DNA from: Convolutriloba macropyga
Lineage: Eukaryota
Assembly: GCF_964194025.1 (NCBI RefSeq)
Contig: NC_134478.1
Coordinates: forward strand, 6,820,001 to 6,884,000
Direction: 5' to 3'
DNA length: 64,000 bases
The notes below the pieces were generated by a model. It was given only the letters and a program-made list of their open reading frames with translations. It had not been told where the DNA came from and searched no databases. How positions within the stretch are numbered: the first letter of the stretch is position 1; each line of letters opens with the position of its first letter. Both the position numbers and the translations under genes were made by a program. This document shows, piece by piece, positions 9,655 through 60,499 of the stretch.

Positions 9655-10640
9655 CACCAAAAACGTCTGAAAAAGAGACGGCATTTTATATTTCAGTCAA
9701 AAGAGACTTCGAATTCTCATATGAGATGATTTTGGACAGATAATCGAACACGCCTCTTTACTTGTCTGAAGACAAAATAATCTTTAAAAATGCAGGCCGT
9801 TAGAAATAGAACTGAACAAAAGAGAAATCTTGCTGATATTTGGAGTTATTTGTTTTAAATTGAAGCCGGTTACCAACCAAAAAATTAGCTCTATGATGAT
9901 AACAGTGAAATGTTTCTTTGTGAATGTAAATTTGTTTAAACAGTCGCAACTGGTTATACTTTTTATCAAGTTTTTGATGTAAAAAATTTGATTTACATTC
10001 AGAAACAAATATTGGAACAGTTTCAAAAAAATTGCTACAATGAGAATTTTTTGTTGCCATTTACCAATTGAGATGCAGGGGAAAACAGTTAAATACAAAT
10101 ATATCCGATAGCAAGGGTTGGTTTTTCGTTTTATTGATAACTAGCTAAGGCTTATGAGCAAGTTTGATATATACGTATGATTATACCCAACAAGGCGCCG
10201 GCTCATGCAAGCCTGGGCGCGGCACAAAATTCTAACAGTCCTTCAGTTAAAAAACGAGTCGAACACTTAAGAGCTGTAGACTCATTCAGCTCATCCTTCG
10301 CATAAAAATTCAGAGAAAAATTTGAAACTAACTTAAACCAATGCAAAGAGCAAAGACAAAAGAATTTTTATGAAACCATCGATTGGCGTCCTCTATTAGA
10401 AAAACCAACGCTTTCATTTAATGTTTAATTTGCCATCTAAAAAACTATAAAACAATTTGAAACTATAAAACATCCAGGCATAAAATTATAGCTCTACTGA
10501 CGCTATTAGTTACATAGCGATTTGTTCCAATACCGAGTTTCCAGCCGAATGAAGAATAAGGCTCAAAATTTCTTAAAATTTTTCCGAGCAATGGTTTATA
10601 TAATTATTTAACTAATTGCTTTGTTAATCGAAACAAAAGG

Positions 10641-11157
10641 AATATAGCCGGCAGATTGCCGGAAAATAGCTGCGATAGACGCTTGTGGCCTTCCATGAAT
10701 TGAAACAACTACAGAAACAAGATAGGCAGATTGACCAAAAGTCCTTTAGTAGACCACTAGATTTTTTGGGTTAGATACGTACTGTCAATTTTACGACACA
10801 TACGGCCTATAAGGAAAAAGCCCTAAAAGGGCTTTCACAAATTGATATTCGAAATCAAAAACTCAAGACTAATACTCAAGAATTAGGGCATAAAAGATTG
10901 GCACCACTTAGATGCACACTATTGATCTTTAACTAGTAAATGTTTATATAGATTAAAGTTCCATAAGTGAGTTCAGAAGTCATTTTTTAGTAAGTCACGC
11001 AATTGACCTAAAAGCAGAAATGACGTCACGGTAAGACGAAACAATGACCTAAAAGCAGAAAAGACGTCACGGTAAGACGAAACAAAAATCTGTTAGAGGA
11101 AGTAAAAAAATTAGGAGCTTAATAATAGCCGCCTGGAATTGCTAACGCGGCTATTAA
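10641..11157 (-). mobile_element. Non-autonomous Helentron-type (HINE/DINE-like) element, family H1
   Basis: One end palindrome TAATAGCCGC..GCGGCTATTA; other end sub-terminal repeat AAAATAGCTGC next to hairpin CCGGCAGATTGCCGG; A/T-run flanks; internal ~41-bp tandem duplication at 11024-11084. Confidence 0.65.
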
Positions 11158-12819
11158 AAAGCAATAAGTGTTAAATACCTTCGCTCAAGTGGACCTTGAC
11201 AGACATTTCAAACTTTGTTTTTCTGTAGTTTTACAGGTAAATTTGAATTTTTTAAAGGGTCTGTCAGTATTTTTCAGTTCGGAATGATTTGTTATGGCAT
11301 TCAGAACAAAAATCTTAAATTAAAGTCCAACGTGTGACACTGTATTCATATTGCTCTGTAGACAATCATCACTCAGAATAAGTGTCTGTGACTGTAATAA
11401 GGAAAAACGACGCAGCATCGGAAGTGTCAAAATTGAACACATTATTGTTATCAAATTCTCAACCTCTACCTATAAAAAAATAATTGTTTTGCAGCAATAA
11501 TAAAACAATTTGGAAACAGACAAACTGGTCAAATTTTTTGAGAAAAAATCACCGCTAAAAATGAAATACAGAAAACTCCACATGTTATTCTTGTGTTGGG
11601 GCAAACCATTAGTACAAACAAAACTTACCATGTCAGATGTTTCTATAGAAAAAATTAACACAAAAAAGTTTTGACTGCGAAAATTCACAGCCGTTCATAT
11701 CACAACCACCACCACCACCACCACCATAGCTTGTGCAAACCATCAAACCTAAAAACAAACTGGCAAAAATTATTCACTATAGATATTTAAAAGCTCCACC
11801 AGCTTTAAATATAGCCAATCAGAAACAACCGAGACAAAAATTTGAGATTGGGCGAAAACTCACAAAATGGAAAAACTAGCAAATATTGTAATTTTGTGTT
11901 TAAGTTGGCATTACTAATACATATTTGTCAGAAAGTTCAAAATGTTTTAAACTCAGAAGACACATGAACTATTAATGAACTTGAGCATAGACTAATTAGT
12001 CAAGAAAAACAAAATAACAGTTTCTGGGTGTGGTGCCGGTGGTGTGTGCGCGCGTCTTTGAGTGAGATACCAATTTGAAATGAAATTAATGAGCCTTCAA
12101 GCGGTACAACCATTATCTCTCTAGATTGCAAAGAAAAATCTCAATTTTGGCCAGAGAAAAAAGACGGCCAACAATATAGTTCCCCGCTTACACGTAACGT
12201 AATGTTGAAACAACTGGATTAAGGTGATTGTGTTGAACCCCACTTCCGCGTAAATGACCTCAATGATCGAAAATTTAGGGAAACTTTCCCCGAAGCGAAG
12301 AAAGTTGCAGTGGAAAAAAAACAAGGTTTTTTAAAAAGTGAACACATCTGAAACTCTGAGACCCTGGCTCATTAAATTTGCACAAAAACTTGATTTTCTA
12401 CAGTTTTTCAATATCTGCAGTCCCAGTTAAGACTGCCACATTTCAAATCCAACGCCCAAAGTGATAAAGAGAACATGTTTGCAAATGTATATCTTCACTT
12501 CCCAACTACCGCTGAATAATTTCCGTGATCTATACTAATGGCAACAAAACATTAGATGTTACTCAGCATTTTCAGATATTTTTTGAACGTTTTTTTTCAA
12601 ATTCTAAAGAACCGTAAATAAGATGTTATTTGCTTTTAACTCACAATTTTATGATCTTATTATGCAACCTTTTTTGAAGCTTGATGAATACAATAAAAAG
12701 GATGAACAAAAAAACCGTTGGAGCTCAAGTAATTCAATAGTTGTTTGGTTCCAAACAACTTTGATGTTGAGCATCTTAACAAAAAAAACAGACCACGAGA
12801 TTGCAATATGGGAGGGTAA

Positions 12820-14570
12820 AGCGATATGAAGGGGGTAGGATTGGGATGGCTGGATGTTCAAATCGCCAGGTTGAGGAGGGTTGACGGAGTGTTGGCGGGG
12901 GGGGGGATTGACCGAGAGGGTCAATTTTAAGATTAAGAACAGCCCTTCACATCATGAAATTGTCTCCTCAAAATAGTGTTGTTGAGTTGCATATTTTGAT
13001 ACAAGTAAGGCTCTAAGAGAACCCTCCGAGCTTCACCTATTTATGTCGCTTTAGATGACAAAAATGGTAAAAGGGTCAGACGCAAATTCGGACGACACTA
13101 AACCGAATAAAAGTAAGTTTTCAGACAAATGAGCAAATGTGATTGCGAATTAGGTCAAAATGCTGAAAATACTCAAAATAGGAAATTTGTGTGCAAATTT
13201 TTGATGTCAAGTTTTTTTTTTAAAAATCTTTCAAAATTTATCGAATAAAAGCTAGAACAATTAATACAACTCAGGATTTGAAAAATGAAAACTAAGAACA
13301 AAATTTAGAAAACCAAACAAAAATCATCAAAAAAATTGAAACGCGATTGCATTCCAGCGAAAATAGAAACCTGCAAATGTCGACTACTGACTCAGGACAT
13401 GGTTTACTAAAATTAAGTAACCTAACCGACTATAGTCAAGCGAACTGCTATCAAACAACTGGCCAGCCTTTGGCTTCATCAGTAGCTAACTGCGTCTTAT
13501 GGAGGCTAGCTTTAGCTTCATGGAGTGTGGAAGGGGGTGAGAATGGATAAGTGTAATCAGTGCGTATGCAGTAGACGATAAGTGTTACTGGTGGAAAGAG
13601 ATAGTAGGGTTTGATTGGGGGGACGAAGTGGGAGAGGGGGCCCTTCAGACCATCAATATGAGCCTCCTAAACAGTCCCAGTGAATCACATACTTTAGTAA
13701 GCCTTAAACCTCTAAGAGACCTTAATGCCCAACGGTCTTTACCAATTTATGGCGTTTTTGAGGACGAAAAGCCAAATGGTCAACCGAAAAGTCGGTGTTG
13801 CAAAAAATTGCATTACGTAATATGGCCAGTAGAACACCGGAAACGATCAGAAGTCTTGCAATATAATGTCTGAACTAACCGCGCCAGAATCAGCATTATC
13901 AAAGAAAAACAAAACGGTGTTCACAATAAAACTACAGAGTGTTTTAAAAAATGCAGACACAATTTTTAGTTCAGGGTTGTTGGTAGGTGTGGGGGATTGG
14001 GGGAGGATTTGATGTGGGCGTGGAGGGTAGGGAGCCAGGGTAGGGGGTGCCGTCTGCAGCTTGGAGAGGGAGCAAAGGAGGGATTGTTATGGGACAATTT
14101 CTCAAAATGACCCTTTGCGACTTGAATATTACCAGTATACTAGTAATTAAGCTATTGTTAAAAAAATGTGTGGAAACAGAAGTCATAGATCTTAAATAAA
14201 ATTTAGTGCTCGAAAACAAAAATCGAAGTTCAAGTCATGAACAACCTTGCTACAGTTCAAAAAATCTCGAGATTACCAATGCTCGTCGGGCGAATTGCTT
14301 TCAAAGGACGCGTGAGCTTGGCTTTGCTAGGAGCCAGCTGGGATGCCAGCATTAGGGGGTGGGAGGACTGGGAGGGGGTGCAAGCATTTGGCCCTTCACA
14401 CCCTGAAAATGTCTCCCCAAAATAGATTTGGTGAATCGCCTTCTTAGAGTATAGTAAGGCGTAAGGCTCTAAAAGAACTTAACGCCCTCCGCGCTTTACC
14501 TGTTTACGCCATTTTTGAGAACCAGAAGTTAAGAGGGTCAGACGCACAGTCGGTCAGCGAAAAATTGAAT
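12820..14570. repeat. Cluster of ~4 degenerate copies of the G-rich interior of family H2
   Basis: Recurrent G-runs followed by GGCTCTAAGAGA..TACCTGTTTA..GGGTCAGACG..TCGG, also seen at 32.7-33.0, 39.05-39.35 and 53.0-53.3 kb. Confidence 0.55.
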
Positions 14571-15357
14571 CAATATTGTTGATTAAATCCATGTACAAAT
14601 ACAAGCCTTAAAAGAGACCGCATGCCGTGGCCTTCAAGATTTTTCACTTAGTTCCACGCTTTCAAGCAGCTGATCTAGAGTGTGATCCAGAAAATATTAG
14701 AAGAGATGTGAGACTAGCAAAATAGTTGTTAATTGATCCAATTTATAACAGAATAAATGCGCGAAACAAGATCAAACAATTTCAACATTACTTTTCACCA
14801 TCCATTTTTATAACGAATCATTATTGTTTGTTTCGAGTGACGATCAAGTTGATAGCTCCTTAAATCAATTGTCCATTCGAAGCAGTTGTTTCATTTTCTC
14901 CCGAAATAAGAATAAACAGTAAGTGAGATCCTTTCAAAATTCTTAAAATTGAACATTTGCAAGATCCTTCCAATAATGAAAAAACGCAGCAAAAAAGACC
15001 TTCTGGTCCCAATATAATGCTCTTCAACGTAGCTATCGAGACTGTATAAATGCCTTTAGCAAGTCTATGAAGGGTAAAATTGGAATTGTTTCGTTTCCAG
15101 CGATAGAAAATGATATATATTTGATAATTGGTCACCCTGATTGTAAAGATAAGTCCCGCTTTTTACCATCAAAGCACGAGAAAAAAAACACCGCAAAACA
15201 GTACCTATGCGACTTATTAAGATATAAAAGAGCGTCTATTCAGAGCGCAGGAAGGTTAGTCATTGACGTACGAAGTCACAGTTTTATCATGAAAATGAAA
15301 CAGGAGAAAAATGAAACAATTGCATCACAATACTAAATGTGGCCAAAGATAATCTGA

Positions 15358-15484
15358 TCAGTGATGTTTGTCATGATCGGATGGTGTGTCCAGGAGTTCC
15401 TCTTTCGATGCTGGCACGTACTGATAGTCTTCCACATTATATCTATCTCCTAAGTATTGGATTATATCGTCTGGCGTTTGTAAC
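15358..15484 (-). CDS. NDUFAB1: Mitochondrial acyl carrier protein, exon 3
   Basis: CTTCAG acceptor; phase-2 join gives R-LQTPDDIIQYLGDRYNVEDYQYVPASKEELLDTPSDHDKHH*, the ACP helix IV plus a tail. Not in the ORF track. Confidence 0.82.
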
Positions 15485-16378
15485 CTGAAGCAGCAAACAA
15501 CAGTTCAGGTTGGTCAAACAGTTGATTGGATAGCCAACAGATTATCGGATAATCACGGTTACAGAATAACGCTTGGAGATATGATCACTGTAGGTTAAAG
15601 AAAGCGTAAAATTCAGAGTTTATTTAAAAACAATCATGGCTTTTGTAACTTGAAGCAACCAACTTGAAATCAGTAAGATCATACTAATTTCAAGACCGAC
15701 CGAACAAATCTAACAGGATGCTAAAGTCGTTCTTCGTGTGGTTGCTTTTCTAGAACTCGTCTTTTTGAGTCCAGAATTTTTTTGCCAGCCTCTACTTTGC
15801 GAATAGCATCGAATACAATGGTAAGTATTATTTTTGCGGTTATATTGGCTGGCTACTTTGGAAACGTAGATGAAGCCTTGAACATAGATGGTTGATTGCC
15901 AAAAAGCTGGAATAGCTTCGTAGAGTGTAGTCTCAAATAACGAATAGAAATAAGAACCGAAAATTTATTTACCTGCATGGAAAAAAGTATTAATCTAAAG
16001 TCCTTAAAAAAGTTAACCAGTTAACCATTAACTAAAAGCATTCAATTAATAATAATAATTGTGGTTTCTGCGTAATCGCAGTGGAACAGCATTAGGCCTA
16101 CAGTAGCCTGTTTTCAGCTGCCCTTTTTCTTATTTTTTCTAATTCGGAGTGACCACAATTATCAATTCAATTGGTTCCAAAACTCGTGAAAATATGTGAA
16201 CAGATCTTAAAAAAAACAGCCAAAATGAAACATTCCATTATTGACAGATTGAAAACTTTTGTGAAGCAATTATCTTCATTATCGCATGAATCCTACTTAC
16301 GCTAAGTTTCATAAATGGAATAATTTACACCAGGTTGAAGAAAAAAGCGTTTTCTAAAATGCTCTGGATTTCGCTTAC

Positions 16379-16605
16379 CTATCCATAACATGCTCTGGGA
16401 TCTCCATATCGAAATCGTCCTCAACATGGATGATGATTTCCACGTGGTCGAGACTATTGAGTCCCAGGTCGTGTGCAAAGTGTGAGGTGGCAGTGAGCTT
16501 GTCAACTTCTATCTTGTCAAACATCTTCAGTACAAACATCACTCTATCGTGGATCTGTTGCAGTGTAGGAGGAGCGGCACTCATACAACGCCTCCACACC
16601 AAACT
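16379..16605 (-). CDS. NDUFAB1: Mitochondrial acyl carrier protein, exon 2 (ACP core)
   Basis: RVMFVLKMFDKI..SHFAHDLGLNSLDHVEIIIHVEDDFDMEIP; TTGCAG acceptor and GTAAGC donor. Confidence 0.9.
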
Positions 16606-16975
16606 CTGCAAATTCAAAGATAGAAAATAAAACATGAGAAAATACGAAACGATTAGAAATCCTCGAAACGAAATTAAACCGCAGCCGGATTTGAAAACAA
16701 CTTTTCCAGCAGTTCCAGAAAACCTGTCAAAAGTTTTGCAATGTCAGAAATTACTGAACAACAAAGTGCTTTATCGTGTCAAAAATTTTTAAGACAAATC
16801 TACAACAAACCGGTGATTTACTAAATTACAAATAAAAATTCAGAACCCCCTGCCCATTATATTACCAAAAGTAGGCGATTCAGATAACCATATTATTTCC
16901 AAGCCTTTAATTCAGTCAGAGCTATATACACATAAGCCTTTTACATCCAATTAAAATCTCAGTTTTCCAGAACAA

Positions 16976-19686
16976 TGTTCCGACCCACTTTACTGGGGGG
17001 AGGAACTATATACCCGAATGTTTTTTTGTTCAGTCAATTTTGGCCGATCGTCGAAGGGAGCTGTGAGTTACATCATTAGAAAGCCGGTCCAGCTTAGAAT
17101 ATGGAAATAAAATTTTTTTTCATTTTCGCTTTTTTCAGTGAGTTAACGAGGTTTTAAGTTTTGTGAATAATAGACGGATTTCCGTTGATTTTATTCACAT
17201 TTTCCGGTACTTTTGCCTATATTTTTTGTCAGTTTTGCTTATATGTTAAAATTAAATTAAAAAATTTTGTTGGTTTGTTTTCGAAAGATAGAAGACTGTT
17301 GATGAGCTTTTTCTGATTTTTTGGCTCAAATTGTTGCTTTATATTTCAAAAAACCATTTCAGCCTTTTTTTCAACGAAAATCGCAAGAAATAAGCTTCTT
17401 TAAACACTTTGTTCGAATTTGCCGGAAGTGAACACCAAAAAACTGCTGACACAAAATGCTTCAGCTCAAGATAGGGTTAATTTACTTCTCCGCTTTCTTT
17501 GTAAGGTTTCTACGATTGAAATTTTGCCGGTTTGTAGCTAATATAGCTCAATAATTATACAAACAGCATGACTTTTCTCTGATAATTGAATTTTTTTGTC
17601 AAACTATTGATATCCCATACACTGGGGCCAATGCATGTCCCTAATGAACGAAGTATTAGCAGAGCTGGTTTTGGTCTAATCGTTGAATTCTAAAAGCAGA
17701 AAATAATCCGGATTAACAAGAAACTATTGACTTTTTATGTTCATTACAGAGCAGAACATTTCACATCTAGTTTCACTATGGACGGGTCCAATTGGTTTTA
17801 TAAACAATTGCCAGGTAATATTTTTACTTTTTTAGTAGAAAGCTTATTGTCGTTTGACTTTTAAAATCATTTGTTTTAAAAATAAACAATGGATTATAGA
17901 GCTGCCACATTTATCCCTTATTTTGTTCAACTTATAACTTAGTTTCAATAGAAAGAATGCATCTTCTACTTAATTAAATTTTAGTCTATTGCGGCTTTGA
18001 ACTACTAGTTTCGCAAATAATTAGAAATTCTGGACATTTGCCCATTTTCAGGTCCTTTTTTCTGGTTTTGTCACATTATCAAAATGCTGATAGGTTATTT
18101 ATCACTTTATTGGTGTTCAAAAAATAGACACAAGTGAAAAATTAAATTTTAAAGGAATGGTTATAGTTTTGACGGCTCCGACACCGTTTTCTAGAACTTG
18201 AAGGCACTTTTTCTTTGTCTTAACTGCTTTTTTTCTTATAGGCGTATGAGGCTACTTTTATAGGCGTATGAGGAACTTTTTCTTATAGGCGTATGAGGCT
18301 TTTTTCTCATAGGCGTATGAGGAACAAATGAGCCGATTTACTTATTTTAGTTGTTAGCTGATGGTTTTCATATTTTTTCAAGAAATGTAAGATTTTTTAA
18401 AAAATTTTCCATCTTCTGTTCCTTTTGTCTATTTCTCACCTAGCCTCAATAACAATGTCACATACTACACTTTGGGATTTTGGGGTCAAGTTGGAGATTT
18501 TAGTGAAATAATCATGGCTTTAATAGCTTCGACAACGGTTTTTCTAGAAATTATATTATTTGATTTTTGTTTGTATTGAAGTTCTTTAAACGTATGAAAA
18601 CTCTATTAACTACTGGTCATATATCACCTTTTTGTCATCAAAGGAACGCGCAATTGAATAAAGTTCGTTTCTAAATGAATTGATGGTCGATGGTCTGAAC
18701 GGATTCAACGCCGGTTTTTTCCAAAATAATTATTTTTCGATTTTTGACTGTTTGATGTTCTTTTTGTTAACGTATGACTTACTGCGAGTAATGACAGGTC
18801 TCAATGGCTTCTGTTGGAGGAATCAAGGAACCTATTTAATGATTTGAATAGCTGATGGTTTTCATGACTAAAAATTGTTTTCAAAACATAAGTATTTCGT
18901 GACTTTGCATCTTGTTCTTTTCTGTCTATTTTCGTCTATCTAATGAATTTCCCGACCTTTAAAATAATTGTTTTCGAAAAAAACAAACGTTGTTTTTAAC
19001 TTTGCTCTTTTATTCCCTGCTTGTTAGTCTCATTAATGAGTGGTTACATATCACTTCATTGGCGTTCAAAAAAACTCGCAATCAAACATTTCTTAATCCT
19101 AGCGCAAAAATTTTGGTCATAACGGGTTCGGCATCGTTTTCTTGCAAAATATTTTTGATTTTTTTTTCTGTATTTGTTGGTTTTTTGAGGTCGTATAAAA
19201 AAAATCGTAATAATGACAGGTCCCAATGTCTTATCTAAAAGAGTTATAGATGATATTAAACATAATGATTTCAGTTCATATCTAATGGTTTTCATTACGT
19301 TTGTTGCCAAGTCTCAATAAGGACTGGTTCTATCTTCTCTATATCTTTTCTAGTGATGAACAATGAACTAGTTATTTTTAGTTTAGGTTTTATCTGACGC
19401 CATTTAGACTTTGCTATTAAGTTTTTCTCTAAATAGAGATCGAGTTTTGTATTTTATTAATGTTGGTTGTTGTTATTTGATTTTGTTTGTCTCGTATTCT
19501 TAATAATGGCAAAGCTCCACGGTCCTCTACAGCGGCATTTTTTAAATTCCACTGAATGACCTGAGTTGGCCGCAATTTTTTAATCACACACCAGACATTT
19601 TCGAAAAACACTCGAATTTTTGATTCTATCCCTTCCTCATTTGGTAGACAATTAAGCTGAAAATGAGGATGAGCGGGGTCGGAACA
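16976..19686 (+). mobile_element. Non-autonomous DNA transposon with TGTTCCGACCC terminal inverted repeats (copy A, in NDUFAB1 intron 1)
   Basis: TGTTCCGACCC at 16976 and GGGGTCGGAACA ending 19686; both ends are homologous, in inverted orientation, to copy B; internal (ATAGGCGTATGAGG)x4 at ~18238-18322. Confidence 0.7.
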
Positions 19687-20004
19687 TTATGTGCTTACGC
19701 ACTTTATTTAGCCTCCTTGTTACAATTAAGGGTGGGAGTGATGTAAATAAATATGAGGGGTCCTGTGATTAATTAATATAGGACATGCCCCGCAGAACAA
19801 GCCTACACGAGTGCGCTCTATGGATTCTACGTACATCAGTGATAGGAGCAGAAGAATGATAGAATATTTTTGCTGGCAAGCACAGTTTTTCACACGAAGG
19901 CCATCGTGCTATTTTAGCAAGTTAATTAAGACTTTTTATATCAATTGATTCAATTTCAATTTGCACTGCGCACTAAGATAGAATTAAGGTTTTTTAGTAC
20001 TCAC

Positions 20005-20226
20005 CAATTGAGGTTCATTGTTGAGACATCGCCCTGTCCTCCTCAGATACTGAATACTCTCATCTCTGTTTTTAACTAATGACTGACAGCTGTTGCTAAA
20101 TTTGAGATATTGGAAACGAGAAGAGGCTGGCAGAGCAGGTGCAAAAAGGAAGCTAGCATGATGCAGTTTGCCAGGAGCGTACACTGCTGATCGTCTCAGG
20201 AAACAAAATGCGCTCGCCAAAACCAT
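20005..20226 (-). CDS. NDUFAB1: Mitochondrial acyl carrier protein, exon 1 (transit peptide)
   Basis: MVLASAFCFLRRSAVYAPGKLHH.. is R/S/A/L-rich and acid-poor at the N-terminus; GTGAGT donor at 20004 is in phase with exon 2. Confidence 0.75.
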
Positions 20227-20325
20227 TGCGGCTCTGAAACGAATCTTACAAACCAATCTCATCAGAAATTTGATTTTGGAACCATTGCATCGAGTCAAAA
20301 CTTTGGATCTCTAGTAACATTTATA

Positions 20326-23900: not shown

Positions 23901-23984
23901 ATTCAGGCGTTAAAAACATAAATAGCAGCCTAACCTTGTATTGACTATTTTTTTTCACTTCCAAAATGTGACCAATTGTCACTT

Positions 23985-50400: not shown

Positions 50401-51130
50401 ATTCAAAAGGCTCAACACTATTTTTTTGGTTATAAAAAAACAAAATCAAGACACCTGAAGGTGTGAAGACTCTTAAGTAAGTAAAACCAAAGCAAAACAA
50501 TTAACAGAGAAATTGAACAAACAGTGTCAAAATCGGATTAGCAGTTGTAAAATGTTATAAAAACAAAAAAATTCGCGTTAGAAATAGGCTTTCAATGCAT
50601 GAAACATCAGAATAAAAGGGCCAGATTCATTGAATTTTGGAGACAAGACCTCTTAATGATCCAAAAATGATGATATCCATAAAAATGAAAAGAAAACTAA
50701 AAACTCGAGAGCTCTGGGGACCACTTTATACTTGAAAAGCAAGTGAAAAATGGGCTCCCAAAAACGTTAACGCCCCACAAAACCTTTCTCGCAGAGCAAA
50801 AATCTGTTCACCACAATAACTTTACTAATTTTCGCTTTCAGGTAAAAATGACATGAACAAATTCCCGTAAAAACAGTAACAATACAAAATGCCGCATATA
50901 ATTAAAACAAGATATAATTTTGACTTAAACACACTGAAATTCTGATACACAAAAATTTGGCATTAATAGCATTTGGTAACGCTGAAAAATGGCCAAAATT
51001 CTTAGAATCATCAAATACTAAAAGGGTCAACACCTAACACGGCTACATATTTTCATTTATACTAGTCTTAACAACTAGAATTCCACCATCAACTCTGGGA
51101 CCCAAACGAGTCATCGTGAAAGTATGAGGT
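47400..51130. repeat. Tandem array, ~1.4-kb unit, ~2.6 copies, with an H1-like end and part of the 485-bp unit
   Basis: ATACTAGTAAACAAATAA recurs at ~47427, 48861, 50291; CATAGCCGGAAGATTTCCG at ~48022 and 49453 (deleted in the third unit). Confidence 0.9.
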
Positions 51131-51749
51131 AGATAATTCTTAGTAAGCAAATTTTTCAAAAAAGAATACTAAAAATTGAGTATAAACAAAACACAATTTT
51201 TTTTCGTAGATTCATAGTAAATGAGAAAAAAAATAAGATACAATGCTCTCTTGTTGCAGATATCATAGAAAAATGGGTTCAAATTCTTGCAGAAATAATT
51301 TAATCGTGAAAAAGACAGAGAATCAGAACAATAATCGAAGGCAAACAAATCGTTCAAATTCAAAAGCGAGGCAGAAAAACAATTCGCAGCTGATAATCAG
51401 TCAAAACTTACAAACACATTTAAAGCAAATACTCAGTGCTGCATTATATTTAACGAAACCAATTGCAAACCAAAAATGAAAATCTAAGAAAAACTGCTAA
51501 AATCATTAGCTCTTTTAAAGGAATGAGAAAAGCAGATTGAATAAAACTGCAGGTTTTAGGAGAAAGCTAGAATGATACATGCCAGAAAGTGCAGAACAAG
51601 GACACAAACAGAAACAAAAAGACAAACTCTTAGTTTCTGAAATTAATAATGGAAATGAAAATAATGAAGTATAAAACAAACACATTTTTTTTATTTAGCA
51701 TTCGAGGCTTACAAAATTTAAGAGCCATCTTCCTCTAGAGATGAAAAAC

Positions 51750-53297
51750 TTAACCGACTAACGTCTAGCGAATTGCTCAAACGAACGGCCAGCAGTTGAC
51801 TTCAACAGTAGCTCGCCACGTTTTAGAGAGGCTTTCAGTTTTTTAGCAAAAAATTTGCAAAATAATACAGAAATTATAAGAAAAGCTTCGAGATTTCGCA
51901 GTGAAAAGGTTCAAAACTATTTTTTGTCTCTGGAGTTATGTCAGGCAACCCATCTTCAAGACTGGCCAGTAATGATCGTTAAACTCAGAAAAGGACAAAA
52001 TTATTCAAAAATTTTGAAAACAATCGCAAATTTTAACAAGATCTTGCTAAAATTCATGTTATCAAAATCTTCAAAACCATTTTATATTCTCAAGAGACCA
52101 TACAGTATCCCTATTTCAAGCTCTGAATAGTTTCATTGGCTCATGATCTATAAACTTGGAACATTCCGAAAACTTGAAAAAAAATATATATTTTATCAAA
52201 AAATTGCAAAAGCTGGAGTCATTAAAATACTGCTAACCATTCCATTAAATCTAGAAACTATGCGACCGCTTATCATCAAGCCTTGAAGGAGGTCCTTAGG
52301 ACCCTGGTACCGGAAAAAAAATAAAAAACGTGAAAAAATTCCAAACGTTTTTTAAAATTGCTGATATTAAAAACCTGAAAAACATTTCATTACATCTAGA
52401 AGCTATGCATTTGCCTATAATGAAAACCTAGAGAAGGTTATGTGGCTTTGAGGCTGGAGAAACTTGAAAAGTGACAATTTAAGAAATCTAGAAAACTTCA
52501 AGTTGCATTAAGAAACTGCTAAAACTTGTGATAATGAAAGTTGAAAACTAATCCATGGCCGAAAGCCAGTAACTTATTATAAAACCCTAACAGAGATTTT
52601 CTGTTAGGCTGAAAAACCGGAATAATGACAAAAATTGTCAGAAAAATTGAAATAAAAGCAAGTTTTATTACCAAAAAATCGCTAAAATTTATATTAAAAA
52701 ATTGAAAGCTATTCCATGGCAAAAAATTTTTTCATAACTTATTATCAAAGGACGTTTTCTGGCCCATGCGTCTGGAAAAACGTGAATAATGAAAAATAAA
52801 TGTCAAAAAACGCTTATATTCGTGATGTTGAAACCATTCCACTACCACTAGAAACTATGCAGTAATCTATTATAAAACCCTACAGGAAGTTCCTTGACAG
52901 CAAGGGCTGAAAGAACTCGAAAAATAACGAAAATTTTCAAAAAGCTCGAAAAGGATAGTGACAATTAGTATAGAATTACGTGTTTTTAGCATCCACGGGG
53001 ATGTATCCACGGGGAGGTGGGCGGGGTGGACAACAGTGGGGTGGGGGGCAATAGCGCGGTGGGGGGGGGTCTTCAAACTCTAAGAACCGCCCATCGCACC
53101 ATAAGTATAAGTCTCCAAAACCGTTTGAGCTGAAACGCTCTAAGAGCATTTAATGCCAGCCGGGTGCTACCTGTTTATCCCGTTTTGAGGACGAAAAGTC
53201 AAAAGCGTCAGACGAAAAATCGGTCAAGCGAAAAATCGCATTAAAAAAGACCAACAGGACTAATATAATTGCTGCAAACTTCGTTTGACAGCAATTT
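51750..53297 (-). mobile_element. Long H2-family element
   Basis: AACCGACTAACGTC..AATTGCTCAAACGAA at left; AATTGCTGCAAACTTCGTTTGACAGCAATT at right. Confidence 0.55.
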
Positions 53298-53635
53298 AAA
53301 ACTGTTAAAATAGTTGAACGATTTCAAACATATATATATATATATATATTTTCAAAAAAAATTTCAAACTTTTTAAAATGGAACTTATGAAAATTTCTGT
53401 ATTTCGAATACTTTAGATTAAAATGTTCTTCCGGTAAGAAAATCCTTAAGAAAACCACTACTCCTCTTCGAGTCGTAAAAAAGACCGATTGAAAAGGCGT
53501 AATAACCGAGGCGTAATCACCAACACGTTTACCATAATTGCTTCAAATTTCGTTCGATCAAATTACTAAAATTCAATTTGAGGTGAAACTTTCCTGATCA
53601 TTAATACAAAACTAAAATGCGTAGCTACAACTTAC

Positions 53636-53868
53636 GGAGCATAGACCGTGTGGATTAAGGCACGATTCGTATCTCTCTTGCTCCAGAGGGTTCATGTCAA
53701 ACGTGAAAACTTTTATTAACGACTCCAACACTACCACAATTCGGTCTTTTCTCAGCTTCACATTCTTTACTTGGCTGGAAAAGTCCATCTCAAATAACTC
53801 CGACTGAGTTGCTCCATTCCAGATAATCACTTTGTTTACTGGATATCGAGCGGGAACTCCGCCACCCA
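53636..53868 (-). CDS. WDR45B: WIPI3-like, exon 2
   Basis: VGGGVPARYPVNKVIIW..VKNVKLRKDRIVVVL..IKVFTF..NPHGLC; TTACAG acceptor and GTAAGT donor. Confidence 0.88.
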
Positions 53869-54377
53869 CTGTAAAAACATTAAATCTGCTTGCTAATCAC
53901 TTCAATATGATGGGTCTTTTAACGTCTTTGCCCCAAGCTTAGTGGGTGCAATTTTTTGCAAACACAGAACAAGAGCTATATCAACACGATTGCTCGCAAT
54001 GACAGATATTTAATAATCGGGGCGATTTACCGATGACAAATGGAAGAGTTACTAAAGTAAACCAAAGCGCCCTTCCAAAACATGACTGAATAAAACTAGA
54101 GCTCTCGGTTTTTCAGCAGGACGACGTTTCAAATGGACATTTAAAACTAGTATATGATAAACCTCAATATGCGGTCATAATTATGTCCTAGTTGACGACG
54201 CGATGTGCGAACCTTGACCCGTTGTTCTGGGATTTTATCTCACAGCGCGTCAGGGCACGACATCGGAACGTGGACTGCAATTTTTGTTTACATTTCGCTA
54301 TTTCTAGTCAATATCGATGCTTATGGATGGCATAGTCAAAATAGCAATATTTAGGGAGGGAGGGTTAACTATGGGGT

Positions 54378-55683
54378 ACTACACCCTCCATGGACGGGGT
54401 TCTGGAGAAAGTGGAGGAGCAGCTTGGCCGAGTCATACCAAACATCGTCGGCAAAGAAATAATCCAAGAGGAAAGACAACTTTTTTCTCTCCCTCTCAGA
54501 ATGGGTGGGCTTAACATCGCCCTCCCACAAGATCTTCATAAAATACTTGAGCAATCAATTGAACTCTCAAGTCCATTGGCGTCATTCAAAAATGATTCAT
54601 TCGAAATTCAACAATGTGAATTAGAACAAACCAAGATCAGTCTCAGATAGAAAGCAGACATGCAACGTGAACTCATCTCGAAAAAATCCAGAATCGAAAA
54701 CAATCTACCAAAAATGAAGTATACCATCCAGCTGGCCTCAGAGAAAAGAGCATTCAGCTGGCTTAACGCGCTTCCGTTATCAAAATATGGTTTTGACCTC
54801 ACGAAGACTGAGTTCCGTGATGGAATAGCACTTCGATACACCTGGGAAGCGAACACGCCAGCCATATGCCCATGCAGTAAAGAATTTAGCCTCACCCATG
54901 CCCTACATTGCGCCAAAGGCGGGTATACGCATCTATAACACAACGAAATCAGAGACGTGTTTGCAAACCTGATTGATGACGTTTGCCACGATGTCTAGAT
55001 AGAGCCAAAATTTCAGTCGCTCGATGGAGAAATTTTCTCGAGTAATTCCACCACTACTGATGATTGCGCTCGCCTGGACATCAAGGCAAACGGTCTGTGG
55101 GATCTCGCTTTAATCGCCCTTGCTTCGATGTGAAGATTTTCAACCCTCACGCGAAGAGCTGCCATAAGACCATTAAAGATGCACACATATCACAAGAGCA
55201 TCAAGCGAAATAAGTACGAAGAGCGAATCCGCGAAACCCAACACAGCAGCTTCAAAGCACTGGTTTTTGCTTGCTCGGGCGGTACTGGGCCATCAGCATC
55301 GCGCGTTATGAAATAACTCGCAACCAAGATCAGCGAAAAACGCGGAGAGCCGTACGCCGACACTATAAGCTACATCCGAACGTTACGTATAAGCTACATC
55401 AGGTTCGCACTTCTGAGGAGCTAGGTTCTGTGCTTGAGGGGATGTCGCGCCCTCAAGCCTCGTGTTCTCAGTGAGACTTCGATTAGCGCCGTCGTGTAGG
55501 TGTTTTCCTCTCAACTTGCTAGTTATTTTTGTGACTGGGCCGTCTTTACAGTGTCTGGAGGGGAACAGTTTGGAGTGCAGCATCCGGCTAAGTGCTACTC
55601 ATCATCCCTTATTTTCCGACCTACATCCATCGTTGCCGGATGGTGTACACGGTCCTTTTTTTATTGTTAGAAGATATGAAGAA
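54378..55683 (+). mobile_element. 5'-truncated CRE-clade (RLE-type) non-LTR retrotransposon, copy 1
   Basis: LPLRMGGLNI, SWLNALP..FRDGIALRY, CPCS..HALHC zinc knuckle, HNEIRD, RLDIKANGLW; flanked by the 14-bp duplication GTTAACTATGGGGT. Confidence 0.8.
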
Positions 55684-55699
55684 GTTAACTATGGGGTGC

Positions 55700-58600
55700 G
55701 GGCTTTTCACGGTTGCGGGCTTAACACGGTTGAGGGCTTTTCACGGTTGCGGCGTCTACGTCCCGAAAGCACCCCAACTCAGATGGGCCAACGGCAACCA
55801 ACCTCTCTCCGAAAGGGGAGGCCAAAGCTTCGGGATGGGGTGTTTTTGACTCCGAGGGGTGCTGGACCGGCCACCACTCCTCGTAAACAAGTCAGAATCA
55901 TCGTCCGGATGCTGTTGATCAAGGGTGGGATCGAACGCAACCCAGGTCCCCAAAGGCCGTGCACGATCTGTACGAAGGAAGCCCTGCACTCCTGCATCCA
56001 ATGTGTAGTGTGCGAGAGATGGACACATTTCACCTGCGCCAAGCTGGATGGAAATAGACTGCCGTACACATGGAGCTGCAGGAGTTGTACAGAAAAGGAA
56101 AACTGTGACACGAACCTTCGGATTACGCAATTCAATTTCAATGGGCTACGGAACAAGATCGAAGAATGCGTCCTGTACATGGAAAAAGTGGGATGAAGAT
56201 AGGGCTTTCTAGGAGACCTTTCTTAAGCCTAACAGCAATCTGAAAGTCCCAAACTATTCAATCATCCGCAAAGACAGGTCAAAGGACAAAGGCGGAGGGA
56301 TTGCAATCATCATCCACAACTCCATCACATACAGCAATGTGTTGGTATAGTGCGATGACGAATTCACTGAGGCACAAGGCATCAAATTCAAGTTTGGCAA
56401 CGAGATTACATTGTTCAACATCGACATCCCGCCTGCATCCAGCTGTGCAAAGGCGTTCCAACCCAATCTGGAGCCTTTCATGGTAGAAGATTCTATCATT
56501 TGCGGTGATCTGAATGGCCACAGCAAGCAATGGCACTCAGCCATAGGGGAAGACCAAAGAGGCGCCATACTCACCCAGCAAATCGATGCGGCTAGCATGG
56601 TCGTCTTGAACGAGAACGCACCCACGAGAGTTCCGTCACAAGGAAGATGCAGCTCACCGCACGTCACCAACGCTCACCCCAACCTTGCCATGAGCACAGA
56701 ATGGTCAGTGGACACTGCTCTTAGCTCAGACCATAATCCCATCGTCAGAGTGTTGCTTGAATCGAAGAGGAGCACAACGGAGAGGCGAACCTGTTAATGT
56801 TAATTTCCTCAAAGCGGACTGGCTGGCCCTCAAGGATTTTGTTGAAGATCGCATCCCTATCCTCCCGGTTGGCGATGTGCCAACTAGCCCTCAGGAAACT
56901 GCTACAAGCGGCAGCCAGAAAGCACATCCCAAAGGAAGGATTCCGTCTATTCTCCCTGGCTTCCCCACTGAAGCCGAGAAACTGACGAGGCAAAGAGACG
57001 ATCTCAGGAGAACCAACCCCTCGAACCCCAGAGTTACCGAGCTGAATCAAGAAATCCAGAAGAAGGTCCAGAAACACCGACAGGATAAATGGATTCAACA
57101 CCTCGAGGAATGCGACCTGCGGAAAGGCTGCAAAAAGCTCTGGCAAACCATCAAAGGTTTGAGCGGCAAAGCAGTCAATATCAGAAATGTGGCAATTAAG
57201 TTAAGTTGATCGAACCATATATGGAGCAACTGAATGTGCCAACAAGTTCAGCCAGATGTATTTCCCCACGTGCAAGGATCCAAAAGAGAAGTGACATCGG
57301 GCCCTCATGCGGAAGATGAAGAATGCCCACTCAGAAGAGGATCTCCTGGTCCCGCAAGAAGTGGAGGCAGCGATTAAGAAAACCAGAAGCTCTAAAGCTC
57401 TGGGCCCCGACAAGCCTGCACCATTGATGCTCAAGAAGCTTGGAACGAACGCAACGGCATATATCACAGATGTTTAATAGGAGCATCAAGCACTCGGTGA
57501 TACCGGGCATATGGAAGTGCTCCCGCGTATTTCCCCTGCTAAAACCCGAAAAGCCAGCAGATCAGGCGAAAAGCTATCGACCCGTGTCTCTGCTCTCACC
57601 CCTCATCAAGCTGCTAGAGACTTCCATGGTGCCGTTTGTCCTCGAAAGCTTCAGCCATGCAGAACATCAACATGGCTTTCGCAGGGGCCAATTCAACACC
57701 ACCACTGCTCTTTGCGAGATAGATGATCACATAAGAACAGGCCTCAACAGAAGGAAACCCGCCCACAGAACCATTATGGTGGCGTCGACCTTCGCGCCGC
57801 TTCCGATACGGTTAATATTAACAAGCTCATCGAAAGAATTGAGAACCTGAAACTGCATGTGAAAATCAAGAGATGGCTCAAGAACTACCTTCATGGAAGG
57901 CAAGCAAAAGTCGAGTTCCGGAACAGCGTGTCAAAAGAAAGGACAATCAGCAGCGGCGTGCCTCAAGGAGGTGTTCTATTTCCTTGCTTATTCAACATCT
58001 ATATGGCAACTGCTCCGACCCCTCCAGAAGACGTGAAGCTGGTAAGCTATGCCGACGATTGCACAGTTCTTTCCTCAGGACCAGTTATCTCCGAAATAGA
58101 GACGAAGACCAACAGTTATCTTGCAGTGCTCCTAAAATGGTTCGAGGAAAACAGCTTTGAACTTTCTCCTGGCAAATCATCGGCGACATTATTCACCACT
58201 TTCAGCAACGAATCAAGTAGAACGCTCAAAAAATATAGGTGGAAGGCAACAGGATACCAACAGAACAACACTCAAAAGTATTAGAAGTCACCTTTGACCC
58301 GATGTACCGATTTGGTGCCCATGCGAAAACCGTAGTGGATAGAGTAGCGAAGAGAAACAACGTCCTCTGTGCCCTAGCCGGGAGCTCAAGGGGGAAGGAT
58401 AAAGAGTTGCTACTCACTACGTACAAAGCTACAGGGAGAGCCATCATCAACTACGCGGCTCCCGTTTGGTCCCCTGGTCTGGCCGATTCGCACTGGTAGA
58501 AAATCCAGAGACGCCAGAACTCTGCCCTGAGAAGCGCCACTGGCTGCACGCGGATGACAATGGAAGACGATCCTCAGAACGAGTTGAAGATTGCCATGTA

Positions 58601-59212
58601 GATTGCCAGGGGTCGGAGCAGTTGCCATGTAGATGTTGCCGTGCGAGACCACTGCCAGCTTCTATCAGCACAACATCTCTTGGCTTCACAGTCGACACAC
58701 CATCCAAACCATGGAATCAAGGACTCAGTCAGCGAAAGAGACATGCGGAAGACCCTGACAGAAGAATTCGGTAGCGATGTTGAAAGTGCCACGGAAAGAA
58801 GCCACCCAAAATGGCTGACGCGAGGCAACATCATACTTCACAGCAAGTTCGTCAGGAAATCCATCTCAAAAATGTGCAACAACAAGGTTCTGAATGTCCC
58901 GTCACCCCTCATTTCCGAGTCGGAGAAGAAGCTTCCCAGGAGTACGAGAGTCAAGCTCGCCCAACTACGAAGTGGCTATAGCAAGTTACTGAATTCGTAC
59001 ATGTCAAGAATCGACCCCGAAGTGCGTGACGTCTGCCCAGATTGCCAAGAGAGCCCACATGACATGAAAAATCTATTCGAGCGCAAGAAGAAACCCACCC
59101 ACCTCACGATCCACAACTTATGGTTGATGCCTGTCGAGGTCGCGTCCTTCCTCGGGCTTTAAAGGCATACCTACTGACGCCGAAGTAGACCCCGGACGGC
59201 TACAACAACAAC
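55700..59212 (+). mobile_element. Full-length decayed APE-RT non-LTR retrotransposon (2A-like peptide, PHD finger, AP endonuclease, RT, C-terminal Cys motif; (CAA)n tail)
   Basis: 21-bp TSD AAGAAGTTAACTATGGGGTGC (55679-55699 and 59213-59233); IERNPGP; C4HC3-type PHD; QFNFNG, QET, GDLNGH, SDH; YRPVSLL, QHGFR, PQGGVL, YADD; LAQLRSG..CPDC; several frameshifts and stops. Confidence 0.92.
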
Positions 59213-59926
59213 AAGAAGTTAACTATGGGGTGCATTGACGTCTAATTGAAACGAAATTTCGTGTCATGAATTTGTCGTTCAGTTAATCCCCCCCCCCCCC
59301 ACTAAAGTTGATTCCATTCCAGCACTTTAGGGGTCGGTCCGATCTGCGATTTCAATTACCCAACATCTCCAAATGATTTTGAGCGTTGCAAACACTAAAA
59401 ACTGCTATGCAAGGCCGCCTTTCACCCCGACTAAATCGCTTTCATTACTCAAACCCACTATTAAAGCTATCCGCTTGCAAATCGATTGGAACAGAAACCA
59501 TATATTTTGCGGAAACAAAAACAAAACATGGTGACAGATCGATTTAGTGGAAGCTTCCAAAAAGTAAACAAACTACCATAACGAAGAAGATCAACGAGTT
59601 CGAGAGAAAATATAAAGATTGATTAACCGAACTTCTCAGAAAGCAGCATGAAAATATTTCATTAAAGAAAGTTGGAACCATTTATGTCAGACTTTTACGT
59701 AGAAAATAGCAATTATGCTCATATCTATGCTAATTATTTGAATCATATACATTGACAAGTAAATGTTTAACCTTCGGTTATAGTCGTGAAAGTTACATAA
59801 TTGCATTCGAGAAAAAAATCTGATTCACTATTATACTGACGATGAACTCTACTTGAAATGGTTAACTAAAATGCGTATCTTCCCGTGTATTTTACAGTAG
59901 ATTGAACTGTAACAGCAGAGACTAAC

Positions 59927-60113
59927 CGAGAGCTAAGTGACTGCACCGGAAAAGCATTTCAGCACAACCAATGCCACCGTCTTTCCATGTGATTCTCTGC
60001 TTCTCCCTCAAAGGATCAGTATTATATATAATAAAGCCGGATGATGTCCCGCAAACAAAACACCCGCCATCCTGGTTGAATCTCATTGATAATATTGAAC
60101 ATATTTCAGTCAT
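59927..60113 (-). CDS. WDR45B: WIPI3-like, exon 1
   Basis: FNQDGGCFVCG..GFIIYNTDPLREK..GGIGCAEMLFRCSHLAL; phase-1 GTTAGT donor fits exon 2. Confidence 0.88.
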
Positions 60114-60499
60114 TTCTGAAATAGGTTCATAGCAAACTCTTGAATTTATAAGGATGGAATCAATTATTTTTAAGACATTTTTAAACTGAGAAAGAAAATA
60201 GCCGCCGAATAACATCCCATATCATCACAATGCGCATTATGTAAAGAGGGAAAAGAGTTTTTTTGTTTTTCAAGAGACTGGAAAACAATCGCTCAGTAGG
60301 TGCAAATCACTTACTAATTAATTTATATGGGTCTTTGCCCCTTATAGCCCCCATTATGGTGTAAATACCATGATTGGGTGCTATAGGTTATATTAGCACT
60401 AGACAGGGGGGGGGGGGGGGGGGGGCGCAATAGCTATAAATAGTCAATTAAAAGAAAGCCCCGATCTATTCTGTTTTGGCCCTCCAGCTTAGTCTTTCA

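What the first reader, a model, noticed from the sequence alone, without database searches (positions are those of the whole stretch)
9655..60121. All four co-oriented genes have TTTCAG 2-12 nt before the start codon: possible SL trans-splicing/operon
Seen: TTTCAG|N-ATG spacing is 12 nt (CNOT10, AG ends 9667), 7 nt (NDUFAB1, 20234), 5 nt (IQCD, 41194) and 2 nt (WIPI3, 60116). Only 2 of the 8 internal acceptors are TTTCAG. All genes are on one strand, and only ~935 bp separate the WIPI3 stop from the IQCD start. Established: an acceptor just upstream of the AUG is the hallmark of spliced-leader trans-splicing. Inference: trans-spliced and possibly polycistronic transcription of four unrelated genes. 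Caveat: candidate upstream donors exist (GTAAAG ~9761 and ~41276, GTAAGT ~60314), so ordinary 5'-UTR introns are a real alternative.
Basis: partly seen in the sequence, partly recalled or inferred. Interest (0 to 1): 0.7.

Follow-up and report, generated by a model that had tools for sequence, protein, structure and literature searches.

The report
Spliced-leader acceptors before four acoel genes
Four same-strand genes of the acoel worm Convolutriloba macropyga each have a splice-acceptor signal just before the start codon, most likely where the animal's shared 31-base RNA leader is added (a process already published for a sister acoel); a single four-gene operon is not supported, although two of the gene pairs lie operon-close in related acoels.

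Summary
TTTCAG ends 12, 7, 5 and 2 nt before the ATG of CNOT10, NDUFAB1/ACP, IQCD/DRC10 and WIPI3, all on the minus strand. Only about 1.8% of ATGs in the window have this.

The genome is Convolutriloba macropyga. It carries about 1,245 spliced-leader (SL) RNA genes, whose 31-nt leader is identical to the one published for Symsagittifera roscoffensis.

No RNA run was available, so SL addition at these four sites is inferred, from four things:
- The acceptor before the ATG is conserved in up to three other acoel genomes.
- A poly(A) cDNA-like contig of an NDUFAB1 orthologue starts with the leader's 3' end 7 nt before its ATG.
- In 42 of 69 leader-bearing cDNAs of a relative, the first ATG lies 0-12 nt after the leader.
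- All three control orthologues carry the same genomic signature.

A four-gene polycistron is not supported here: the spacers are 928 nt, 10.9 kb and 5.7 kb. However, the gene order is conserved in a sister genome. In more distant acoels NDUFAB1-CNOT10 are 165 nt apart and WIPI3-IQCD about 265 nt apart, which suggests two old operon-like pairs.

This scan already reported the same signature on at least six other stretches of this genome.

The parts
60116..60121 (-). TTTCAG acceptor 2 nt before the WIPI3 ATG (60113-60111). Candidate SL trans-splice site.
   Evidence: An upstream out-of-frame ATG at 60130 would be removed by splicing here. No orthologous first exon could be fetched for comparison.
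42123..60113 (-). WIPI3 (WDR45B/PROPPIN) coding region. Exons are about 60113-59927, 53868-53636 and 42764-42126, with the stop at 42125-42123.
   Evidence: PROPPIN Pfam hit at E 7.6e-15. tblastn to sister loci. Splice-site reading. Intron 1 holds an antisense reverse-transcriptase element at 55462-59162.
41195..42122 (-). 928-nt spacer between the WIPI3 stop and the IQCD acceptor. It is single-copy, has no AATAAA or ATTAAA, and has a ~70-nt block (about 41655-41725) conserved with the sister species.
   Evidence: Contig depth is flat across it in the DNA runs.
41194..41199 (-). TTTCAG acceptor 5 nt before the IQCD/DRC10 ATG (41188-41186). Candidate SL trans-splice site.
   Evidence: The sister genome has TTTTTAAG 5 nt before its ATG, and a third genome has TTTTTAG 16 nt before.
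31147..41188 (-). IQCD/DRC10 coding region. Exons are about 41188-40635, 38116-37870, 37024-36797 and 31512-31150, with the stop at 31149-31147. Inner boundaries are approximate.
   Evidence: DRC10_N on orthologues. tblastn..
20326..30800 (-). Six same-strand copies of a ~205-nt H/ACA-like RNA element in the IQCD>NDUFAB1 spacer. The last copy ends 92 nt upstream of the NDUFAB1 acceptor.
   Evidence: Within the 40 best candidates scored, the family is seen only on chromosome scaffold C11: 36 matches, including a ~280-nt-period array about 100 kb away. The copies keep the same orientation relative to the genes in the sister genome.
20234..20239 (-). TTTCAG acceptor 7 nt before the NDUFAB1/ACP ATG (20226-20224). 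Candidate SL trans-splice site.
   Evidence: The sister genome has TTTTTAG 7 nt before its ATG. The orthologous cDNA-like contig L032 begins CTTATTCAATAG + 7 nt + ATG.
15358..20226 (-). NDUFAB1 (mitochondrial acyl carrier protein) coding region. Exons are 20226-20005, 16605-16379 and 15484-15361, with the stop at 15360-15358.
   Evidence: PP-binding domain..
9668..15357 (-). 5,690-nt spacer between the NDUFAB1 stop and the CNOT10 acceptor. It contains a ~530-nt high-copy dispersed repeat at about 10631-11167.
   Evidence: 9,339 first-look candidates; 83-92% identical copies on many chromosomes.
9667..9672 (-). TTTCAG acceptor 12 nt before the CNOT10 ATG (9654-9652). Candidate SL trans-splice site.
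   Evidence: In three other acoel genomes TTTCAG or TTTTCAG lies 7, 15 and 15 nt before the conserved start.
7040..9654 (-). CNOT10 coding region. Exons are 9654-8182 and 7669-7043, with the stop at 7042-7040 (about 700 aa).
   Evidence: (CNOT10_TPR).

Best explanation
The four TTTCAG motifs are 3' splice sites at which the 31-nt spliced leader of Convolutriloba macropyga is trans-spliced onto the pre-mRNAs of WIPI3, IQCD/DRC10, NDUFAB1 and CNOT10.

Splicing there discards an upstream outron, including its upstream ATGs. It leaves mature mRNAs with a leader plus only 2-12 nt before the AUG.

In this genome the four genes are probably not one operon. The row looks like two old, conserved gene pairs, WIPI3>IQCD and NDUFAB1>CNOT10. 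These pairs are operon-tight in other acoels. Here they are separated by 0.93 and 5.7 kb, and the two pairs are 10.9 kb apart. Only WIPI3>IQCD remains a realistic candidate for co-transcription.

Shown: the motifs, the SL RNA genes, the conservation and the synteny. Inferred: that the leader is actually added at these four sites, and whether any co-transcription occurs.
For: 1. Genome identity. G000 has 1,175,981,408 bases in 4,694 scaffolds. This equals the published C. macropyga assembly txConMacr16.3 (PMC13650328).

2. SL machinery. The leader published for S. roscoffensis, where 30.2% of genes are SL trans-spliced (PMC9911081), occurs with at most 3 mismatches 2,612 times in G000. Of leader copies, 1,245 are followed by the donor GTAAG. 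These lie mostly in tandem arrays on C9 at 23.1-23.8 Mb. They have classic SL RNA anatomy: the donor sits in a stem, followed by a Sm-like AGUUUUAUUUGA and a second hairpin.

3. Conserved acceptors.
- CNOT10: TTTCAG or TTTTCAG lies 7-15 nt before the conserved start in three other acoel assemblies, while the flanks are unalignable.
- NDUFAB1 and IQCD: TTTTTAG, TTTTTAAG and TTTTTAG lie at the same or similar spacing.

4. Orthologue cDNA. L032 is intronless and has a poly(A) tail. It starts with CTTATTCAATAG, an 11/12 match to the leader's 3' end, then 7 nt, then the ATG of an NDUFAB1 orthologue.

5. Leader-to-ATG spacing. 69 of 80 fetched metatranscriptome contigs carry the leader at their extreme 5' end. 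The first ATG lies 0-12 nt after it in 42 of 69.

6. Controls. The C. macropyga orthologues of three such cDNAs have TTTTCAG, TTTTCAG and TTTTAG 7-8 nt before the ATG.

7. Synteny.
- The sister genome keeps WIPI3>IQCD>ACP>CNOT10 on one strand.
- In ERZ25074608 the ACP stop is 165 nt from the CNOT10 acceptor. That genome also carries the leader sequence at the head of a LINE.
- In ERZ26859043 the WIPI3 stop is 281 nt from the IQCD ATG.
Against: No RNA of this species was seen. The only runs offered were DNA contigs.

No SL-gene junction for any of the four genes exists as a retrocopy in the genome. None of the 80 leader-bearing cDNAs belongs to these genes. An IQCD cDNA was not found in the metagenome collection.

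Donor-like GTRAG or GTAAAG motifs lie 40-94 nt upstream of the IQCD acceptor in three species, and upstream of the CNOT10 acceptor here. These could define short cis introns.

For WIPI3 there is no comparative evidence at all.

L032 shows only 12 leader nucleotides, with one mismatch, and comes from an unidentified relative.
Confidence: 0.7

Rival explanations
1. The acceptors close ordinary cis-spliced 5'-UTR introns. Each gene has its own promoter and a short non-coding first exon (donors near 9761, 41276 and 60314), and no leader is added.
For: Donor-like motifs exist upstream. For IQCD a GTAAAG, GTGAGG or GTAAAG lies 82, 62 and about 40 nt upstream of the acceptor in three species. Short introns of 65-81 nt do occur in this genome. 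About 70% of genes in the sister genus are not SL trans-spliced (PMC9911081).
Against: The putative upstream exons carry ATGs. In the sister species' IQCD, one of them would open a long out-of-frame ORF overlapping the true start. No conserved donor is seen for CNOT10 in the sister genome or in L025. In L025 only 165 nt separate the upstream gene's stop from the acceptor. The NDUFAB1 orthologue cDNA starts with leader sequence, not a local exon. The NDUFAB1 site here has no usable donor: the only GTAAG is 11 nt from the AG.
Confidence: 0.17
2. All four genes are transcribed as one polycistronic precursor of about 53 kb from a promoter upstream of WIPI3. The precursor is resolved by SL trans-splicing.
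For: All four genes are on the same strand and all have acceptors before the ATG. The four-gene order is conserved in the sister genome. Same-strand H/ACA-like RNA copies in the IQCD>NDUFAB1 spacer might need a host transcript. No canonical poly(A) signal occurs in the WIPI3>IQCD spacer.
Against: Spacers of 10.9 and 5.7 kb are one to two orders of magnitude longer than the intercistronic regions of known SL operons (about 100 nt in C. elegans, from general knowledge). One spacer holds a dispersed repeat. In ERZ26859043 the row is broken: IQCD is followed by an ARM-repeat gene, and CNOT10 has no ACP within 10 kb. The H/ACA-like family also forms its own tandem array elsewhere on the chromosome, so it need not depend on a host transcript. 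No transcript evidence exists.
Confidence: 0.06
3. Chance. TTTCAG is simply common in this AT-rich genome and happens to precede four ATGs.
For: 49 TTTCAG on the minus strand of the window; 15 other TTTCAG-N(0-12)-ATG sites exist.
Against: The background rate is about 1.8% per ATG, so four of four true starts has a probability of about 1e-7. The motif is also conserved at orthologous starts in other genomes. The 15 other sites open only non-conserved ORFs of 2-96 aa.
Confidence: 0.01

Closest known systems
SL trans-splicing in the acoel Symsagittifera roscoffensis (Martinez et al. 2022, G3; PMC9911081)
   Same: The leader sequence is identical (31 of the 32 published bases; the last published A is not part of the SL exon in the C. 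macropyga SL RNA gene). Both species belong to the same family-level group. Leader addition occurs close to the AUG.
   Different: That paper reports genome-wide numbers (30.2% of genes) for another species. It does not mention operons, these genes, or C. macropyga, whose genome note carries no annotation.
Nematode SL1/SL2 trans-splicing and operons (C. elegans)
   Same: U-rich UUUCAG acceptor just upstream of the AUG. An outron without a paired donor. Unrelated housekeeping genes on one strand. Conserved gene pairs.
   Different: Only one leader type was seen here. Spacers in this window are 0.9-11 kb, against about 100 nt in C. elegans. No polycistronic RNA is shown. The SL sequence is unrelated.
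SL trans-splicing in flatworms (Macrostomum lignano, Schistosoma) and tunicate operons (Ciona, Oikopleura)
   Same: A sizeable minority of genes is trans-spliced, enriched for conserved housekeeping genes. Short operons of two or three genes occur.
   Different: These are different phyla with independently evolved leaders. Tunicate operons have almost no intercistronic space.
Earlier findings of this scan on other stretches of the same genome (s1-234607, s1-237278, s1-214644, s1-244529, s1-240981)
   Same: The same signature (TTTCAG-type acceptor before the ATG of co-oriented genes) and the same conclusion: the leader is likely, the operon unproven. One of them also describes a cluster that is tight in a sister species and stretched here.
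   Different: Different genes. Here two pairs are documented at 165 nt and about 265 nt in more distant acoel assemblies, and one orthologue cDNA carries the leader.

Membership tests
SL trans-spliced gene | The genome encodes an SL RNA: leader exon, GT donor, Sm-like site and flanking hairpins. | tested here: met
   1,245 copies of ...AAATAG|GTAAG, mostly in tandem arrays on C9. The fold shows the donor in stem 1, then AGUUUUAUUUGA, then a second hairpin.
SL trans-spliced gene | The mature mRNA carries the non-genomic leader joined exactly at the acceptor AG. | not testable with these tools
   No RNA run of this species was served. Indirect evidence only: the NDUFAB1 orthologue cDNA L032 begins with 11/12 bases of the leader's 3' end, 7 nt before the ATG.
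SL trans-spliced gene | A strong 3' splice site close upstream of the AUG, conserved in relatives. | tested here: met
   Orthologous sites are conserved for CNOT10 (three genomes), NDUFAB1 (one genome plus one cDNA) and IQCD (two genomes). WIPI3 could not be compared.
SL trans-spliced gene | No functional cis donor upstream, i.e. an outron rather than an intron. | tested here: inconclusive
   Donor-like GTAAAG or GTAAGT lie 82-200 nt upstream for three genes. For IQCD the motif recurs in three species. For CNOT10 it is not conserved. For NDUFAB1 there is no usable donor.
SL-resolved operon | Genes lie on one strand in conserved order. | tested here: met
   The same order and strand in the sister assembly ERZ25071366. 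Pairs are conserved in ERZ25074608 and ERZ26859043.
SL-resolved operon | Short intercistronic distance, tens to a few hundred nt, leaving no room for a promoter. | tested here: not met
   In this window the distances are 928 nt, 10,912 nt and 5,690 nt. The feature is met only in other species: 165 nt for ACP>CNOT10 in L025 and about 265 nt for WIPI3>IQCD in L030.
SL-resolved operon | A polycistronic precursor spans the gene boundaries. | not testable with these tools
   Only DNA contigs were available.

The most novel reading that the evidence does not exclude
WIPI3>IQCD and NDUFAB1>CNOT10 are ancient acoel operons that are still co-transcribed in C. macropyga across kilobase-long spacers. The H/ACA-like RNA copies lying on the same strand just upstream of the NDUFAB1 acceptor would be processed from the discarded outron or intercistronic RNA. 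This would be the first description of operons in Xenacoelomorpha, and of operons that tolerate spacers one to two orders of magnitude longer than elsewhere.
Probability: 0.12. Interest if true: 0.7.

Novelty: new member of a known kind. Interest (0 to 1): 0.35.

Why it matters
The C. macropyga genome is published without annotation. Knowing that a T-rich YAG 0-15 nt before the ATG marks leader addition gives annotators a simple rule for placing gene starts and separating neighbouring genes.

The comparative result is the more interesting part. Two unrelated-gene pairs stay adjacent and co-oriented across acoels that share only about 40% CNOT10 identity, with 165-265 nt between them in some species. 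That is the pattern expected of operons, and I found no paper describing operons in Xenacoelomorpha.

If confirmed, it would add a lineage to the list of animals that combine SL trans-splicing with operons. It would also show how such units decay when repeats and other DNA expand the spacers.

Tried and rejected
1. Direct RNA evidence. The look-up of sequencing runs returned only four runs of unknown kind. When laid on 39500-45400 they proved to be genomic DNA contigs. They cover introns and the spacer continuously, show allelic variants, and have no exon junctions. They therefore say nothing about transcripts. They do show that the WIPI3-IQCD spacer is single-copy, and that 39500-39893 and 43046-43439 are very high-copy repeats.

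2. Leader-gene junctions fossilised as retrocopies. I searched the genome for the last 12 leader bases joined to each gene's post-AG sequence. There was no match for any of the four genes.

3. cDNA of the four genes in public collections.
- The CNOT10 and IQCD exon searches found only genomic ORFs.
- The IQCD alignment found no relative in metagenome contigs.
- None of the 80 fetched leader-bearing contigs matches a window exon.

4. Rfam. There were no hits at gathering score in the window. In 20200-31200 there were only two sub-threshold snoR113 matches.

5. One control search was sent with the wrong end of contig L095 and gave nothing usable.

6. Spliced models. Joined spliced proteins were not sent to any search tool; exons were searched one by one, by reference. 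A joined translation was computed only inside a script, to choose the frame-preserving acceptor of NDUFAB1 exon 2.

7. The large representative protein search was not used, because protein identity was not in doubt.
Full report
**Observation**

On the minus strand, TTTCAG ends shortly before the start codon of four genes:

| Gene | AG ends at | Distance to ATG | ATG |
|---|---|---|---|
| CNOT10 | 9667 | 12 nt | 9654 |
| NDUFAB1 | 20234 | 7 nt | 20226 |
| IQCD | 41194 | 5 nt | 41188 |
| WIPI3 | 60116 | 2 nt | 60113 |

The gene names hold:
- The last WIPI3 exon is a PROPPIN.
- The second CNOT10 ORF carries CNOT10_TPR.
- IQCD exon 1 and its orthologues carry DRC10_N.
- NDUFAB1 carries PP-binding.

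Exon maps came from tblastn against related loci and from reading the splice sites.

The eight internal acceptors are TTACAG, ATTTAG, GAACAG, TAATAG, GTTTCAG, TTTGCAG, CTTCAG and TTTTCAG.

Only 19 of 1,042 minus-strand ATGs have TTTCAG within 12 nt upstream. The other 15 such sites open only non-conserved ORFs of 2-96 aa. The pattern is real and is not chance.

**Whose genome this is**

G000 has 1,175,981,408 bases in 4,694 scaffolds. That is exactly the published Convolutriloba macropyga assembly txConMacr16.3: 1,175.98 Mb in 4,694 scaffolds (PMC13650328). That genome note has no annotation and no mention of splicing.

**The leader**

SL trans-splicing is published for the related acoel Symsagittifera roscoffensis, with a stated leader and 30.2% of genes affected (PMC9911081).

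- That leader occurs 2,612 times (at most 3 mismatches) in G000.
- 1,245 leader copies are followed by GTAAG. Most lie in tandem arrays on C9 at 23.1-23.8 Mb.
- These copies have textbook SL RNA anatomy: a 31-nt exon, the donor buried in a stem, a Sm-like AGUUUUAUUUGA and a second hairpin.
- The exon ends ...AAATAG. The extra A in the published 32-mer is the commonest first base of acceptor exons.

The machinery is therefore present. The window itself has no leader copy.

**Are these four AGs leader acceptors?**

Direct proof was not obtainable. The only runs offered are genomic DNA. The indirect evidence is consistent, as follows.

*(a) The acceptors are conserved.*
- CNOT10: aligning N-termini shows the true start is MD(R/K)EQL or M(D/E)SNQKDEQL. 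TTTCAG, TTTCAG and TTTTCAG lie 7, 15 and 15 nt before it in three other acoel assemblies. These share only 65%, 40% and 41% protein identity with the window, and their flanks do not align.
- NDUFAB1: the sister genome has TTTTTAG at the same 7-nt spacing.
- IQCD: the sister genome has TTTTTAAG at the same 5-nt spacing, and a third genome has TTTTTAG at 16 nt.

*(b) An orthologue cDNA carries the leader.* The 1,100-nt JGI contig L032 is intronless and ends in poly(A). It encodes an NDUFAB1 orthologue and begins CTTATTCAATAG|ATTGAAA|ATG. That is 11 of 12 bases of the leader's 3' end, 7 nt before the ATG.

*(c) Leader-bearing cDNAs have short 5' UTRs.* A scan of metagenome contigs for the leader returned more than 120 contigs.
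- Of the 80 fetched, 69 carry the leader at their very 5' end.
- The first ATG follows within 0-12 nt in 42 of these 69.
- They come from a relative about 81% identical in DNA to G000.

*(d) Controls.* For three of these cDNAs I located the C. macropyga orthologue. Each has TTTTCAG, TTTTCAG or TTTTAG 7-8 nt before the ATG.

*(e) Upstream ATGs.* All four sites have ATGs just upstream of the AG that splicing would remove.

**The cis-intron alternative**

Donor-like motifs exist upstream.
- For IQCD such a motif recurs 40-82 nt upstream in three species. That keeps a short 5'-UTR intron possible. However, the putative upstream exon in the sister species would place an overlapping out-of-frame ATG before the true start.
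- For CNOT10 the donor is not conserved.
- For NDUFAB1 there is none at a usable distance.
- For WIPI3 I could not fetch an orthologous first exon.

My estimates that the leader is added are about 0.9 for NDUFAB1, 0.85 for CNOT10, 0.75 for IQCD and 0.7 for WIPI3.

**Operon?**

The spacers in the window are:

| From | To | Length |
|---|---|---|
| WIPI3 stop | IQCD AG | 928 nt |
| IQCD stop | NDUFAB1 AG | 10,912 nt |
| NDUFAB1 stop | CNOT10 AG | 5,690 nt |

What the spacers contain:
- The 928-nt spacer is single-copy and lacks AATAAA and ATTAAA. It has a ~70-nt block conserved with the sister species about 400-470 nt after the stop. That block could be the end of the WIPI3 3' UTR or a regulatory element.
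- The 5.7-kb spacer holds a ~530-nt dispersed repeat.
- The 10.9-kb spacer holds six same-strand copies of an H/ACA-like ~205-nt element.

Comparison with other assemblies:
- The sister assembly ERZ25071366 keeps all four genes in order on one strand. Its spacers are about 0.6, 5.7 and 7.8 kb.
- In ERZ25074608 the ACP stop is 165 nt from the CNOT10 TTTCAG. That genome also carries the leader sequence, at the 5' end of a LINE.
- In ERZ26859043 the WIPI3 stop is 281 nt from the IQCD ATG and about 265 nt from its acceptor. There IQCD is followed by another gene, and CNOT10 has no ACP within 10 kb.

So there are two conserved pairs with operon-like spacing in some acoels. In this genome the arrangement is loose. 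A single four-gene polycistron is unlikely (about 0.06). Co-transcription of WIPI3>IQCD remains open (about 0.3).

**Known or new**

The mechanism is published for a sister genus with the identical leader. This scan has already reported the same signature on at least six other stretches of this genome. The finding is therefore a new member of a known kind.

The possible novelty is operons in Xenacoelomorpha, for which a full-text search found no paper. That rests on synteny and spacing only.

**Not done**

Joined spliced proteins were not searched; exons were searched singly, by reference.

Noticed in passing
G000 genome-wide (L001-L010); L025:2390-5393: More than a thousand genomic leader copies are not SL RNA genes. 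In these the leader is joined directly to mRNA-like sequence, with an ATG 2-11 nt later in 8 of 10 loci examined. Three of the ten share the same continuation (GATGAGCCAGCGAGGCATG), which suggests a repeat family. In another acoel assembly a leader-like 31-mer (28/31 bases) sits 12 nt before ORF1 of a LINE with endonuclease and RT domains. This suggests retroelements whose transcripts are leader-spliced and then reverse-transcribed.
   Followed up: partly
window 20326-30800 (-); G000:C11:6707877-6729494: A ~205-nt H/ACA-like element (ACA followed by 3 nt at the minus-strand 3' end at 20326) has six copies in the IQCD>NDUFAB1 spacer, all on the gene strand. Within the 40 candidates scored, the family is seen only on this chromosome: 36 matches, including a ~280-nt-period tandem array about 100 kb away. 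In the sister genome it also fills a WIPI3 intron and the IQCD>ACP spacer. Rfam does not recognise it.
   Followed up: partly
window ~41655-41725 (-): A ~70-nt block in the otherwise unalignable WIPI3-IQCD spacer is about 75% conserved with the sister species. It could be a 3'-UTR end or polyadenylation element of WIPI3, or a regulatory element of IQCD.
   Followed up: no
window 55462-59162 (+) and 60969-63760 (-): A reverse-transcriptase-bearing retroelement lies antisense inside WIPI3 intron 1. A degraded RT element on the gene strand lies upstream of WIPI3. Its last ORF (61259-60969, 96 aa) is itself preceded by TTTCAG + 7 nt.
   Followed up: partly
window 39500-39893 and 43046-43439: These are very high-copy repeats. 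Summed contig depth reaches up to about 120,000 in the DNA runs, against 10-50 for the flanks. They lie in an IQCD intron and the last WIPI3 intron.
   Followed up: no
window 10631-11167: A ~530-nt dispersed non-coding repeat, 83-92% identical to copies on many chromosomes (9,339 first-look candidates), lies in the NDUFAB1>CNOT10 spacer.
   Followed up: no
L070 (JAAUXW010308685.1), L062/L079/L097 (Ga0126343, Ga0316207): Public metagenome or WGS records contain acoel DNA. They hold SL RNA genes with a slightly different intron, and a copy in which the leader is followed by TTTCAG and then the same GATGAGCCAGCGAGGCATG continuation seen in C. macropyga.
   Followed up: no
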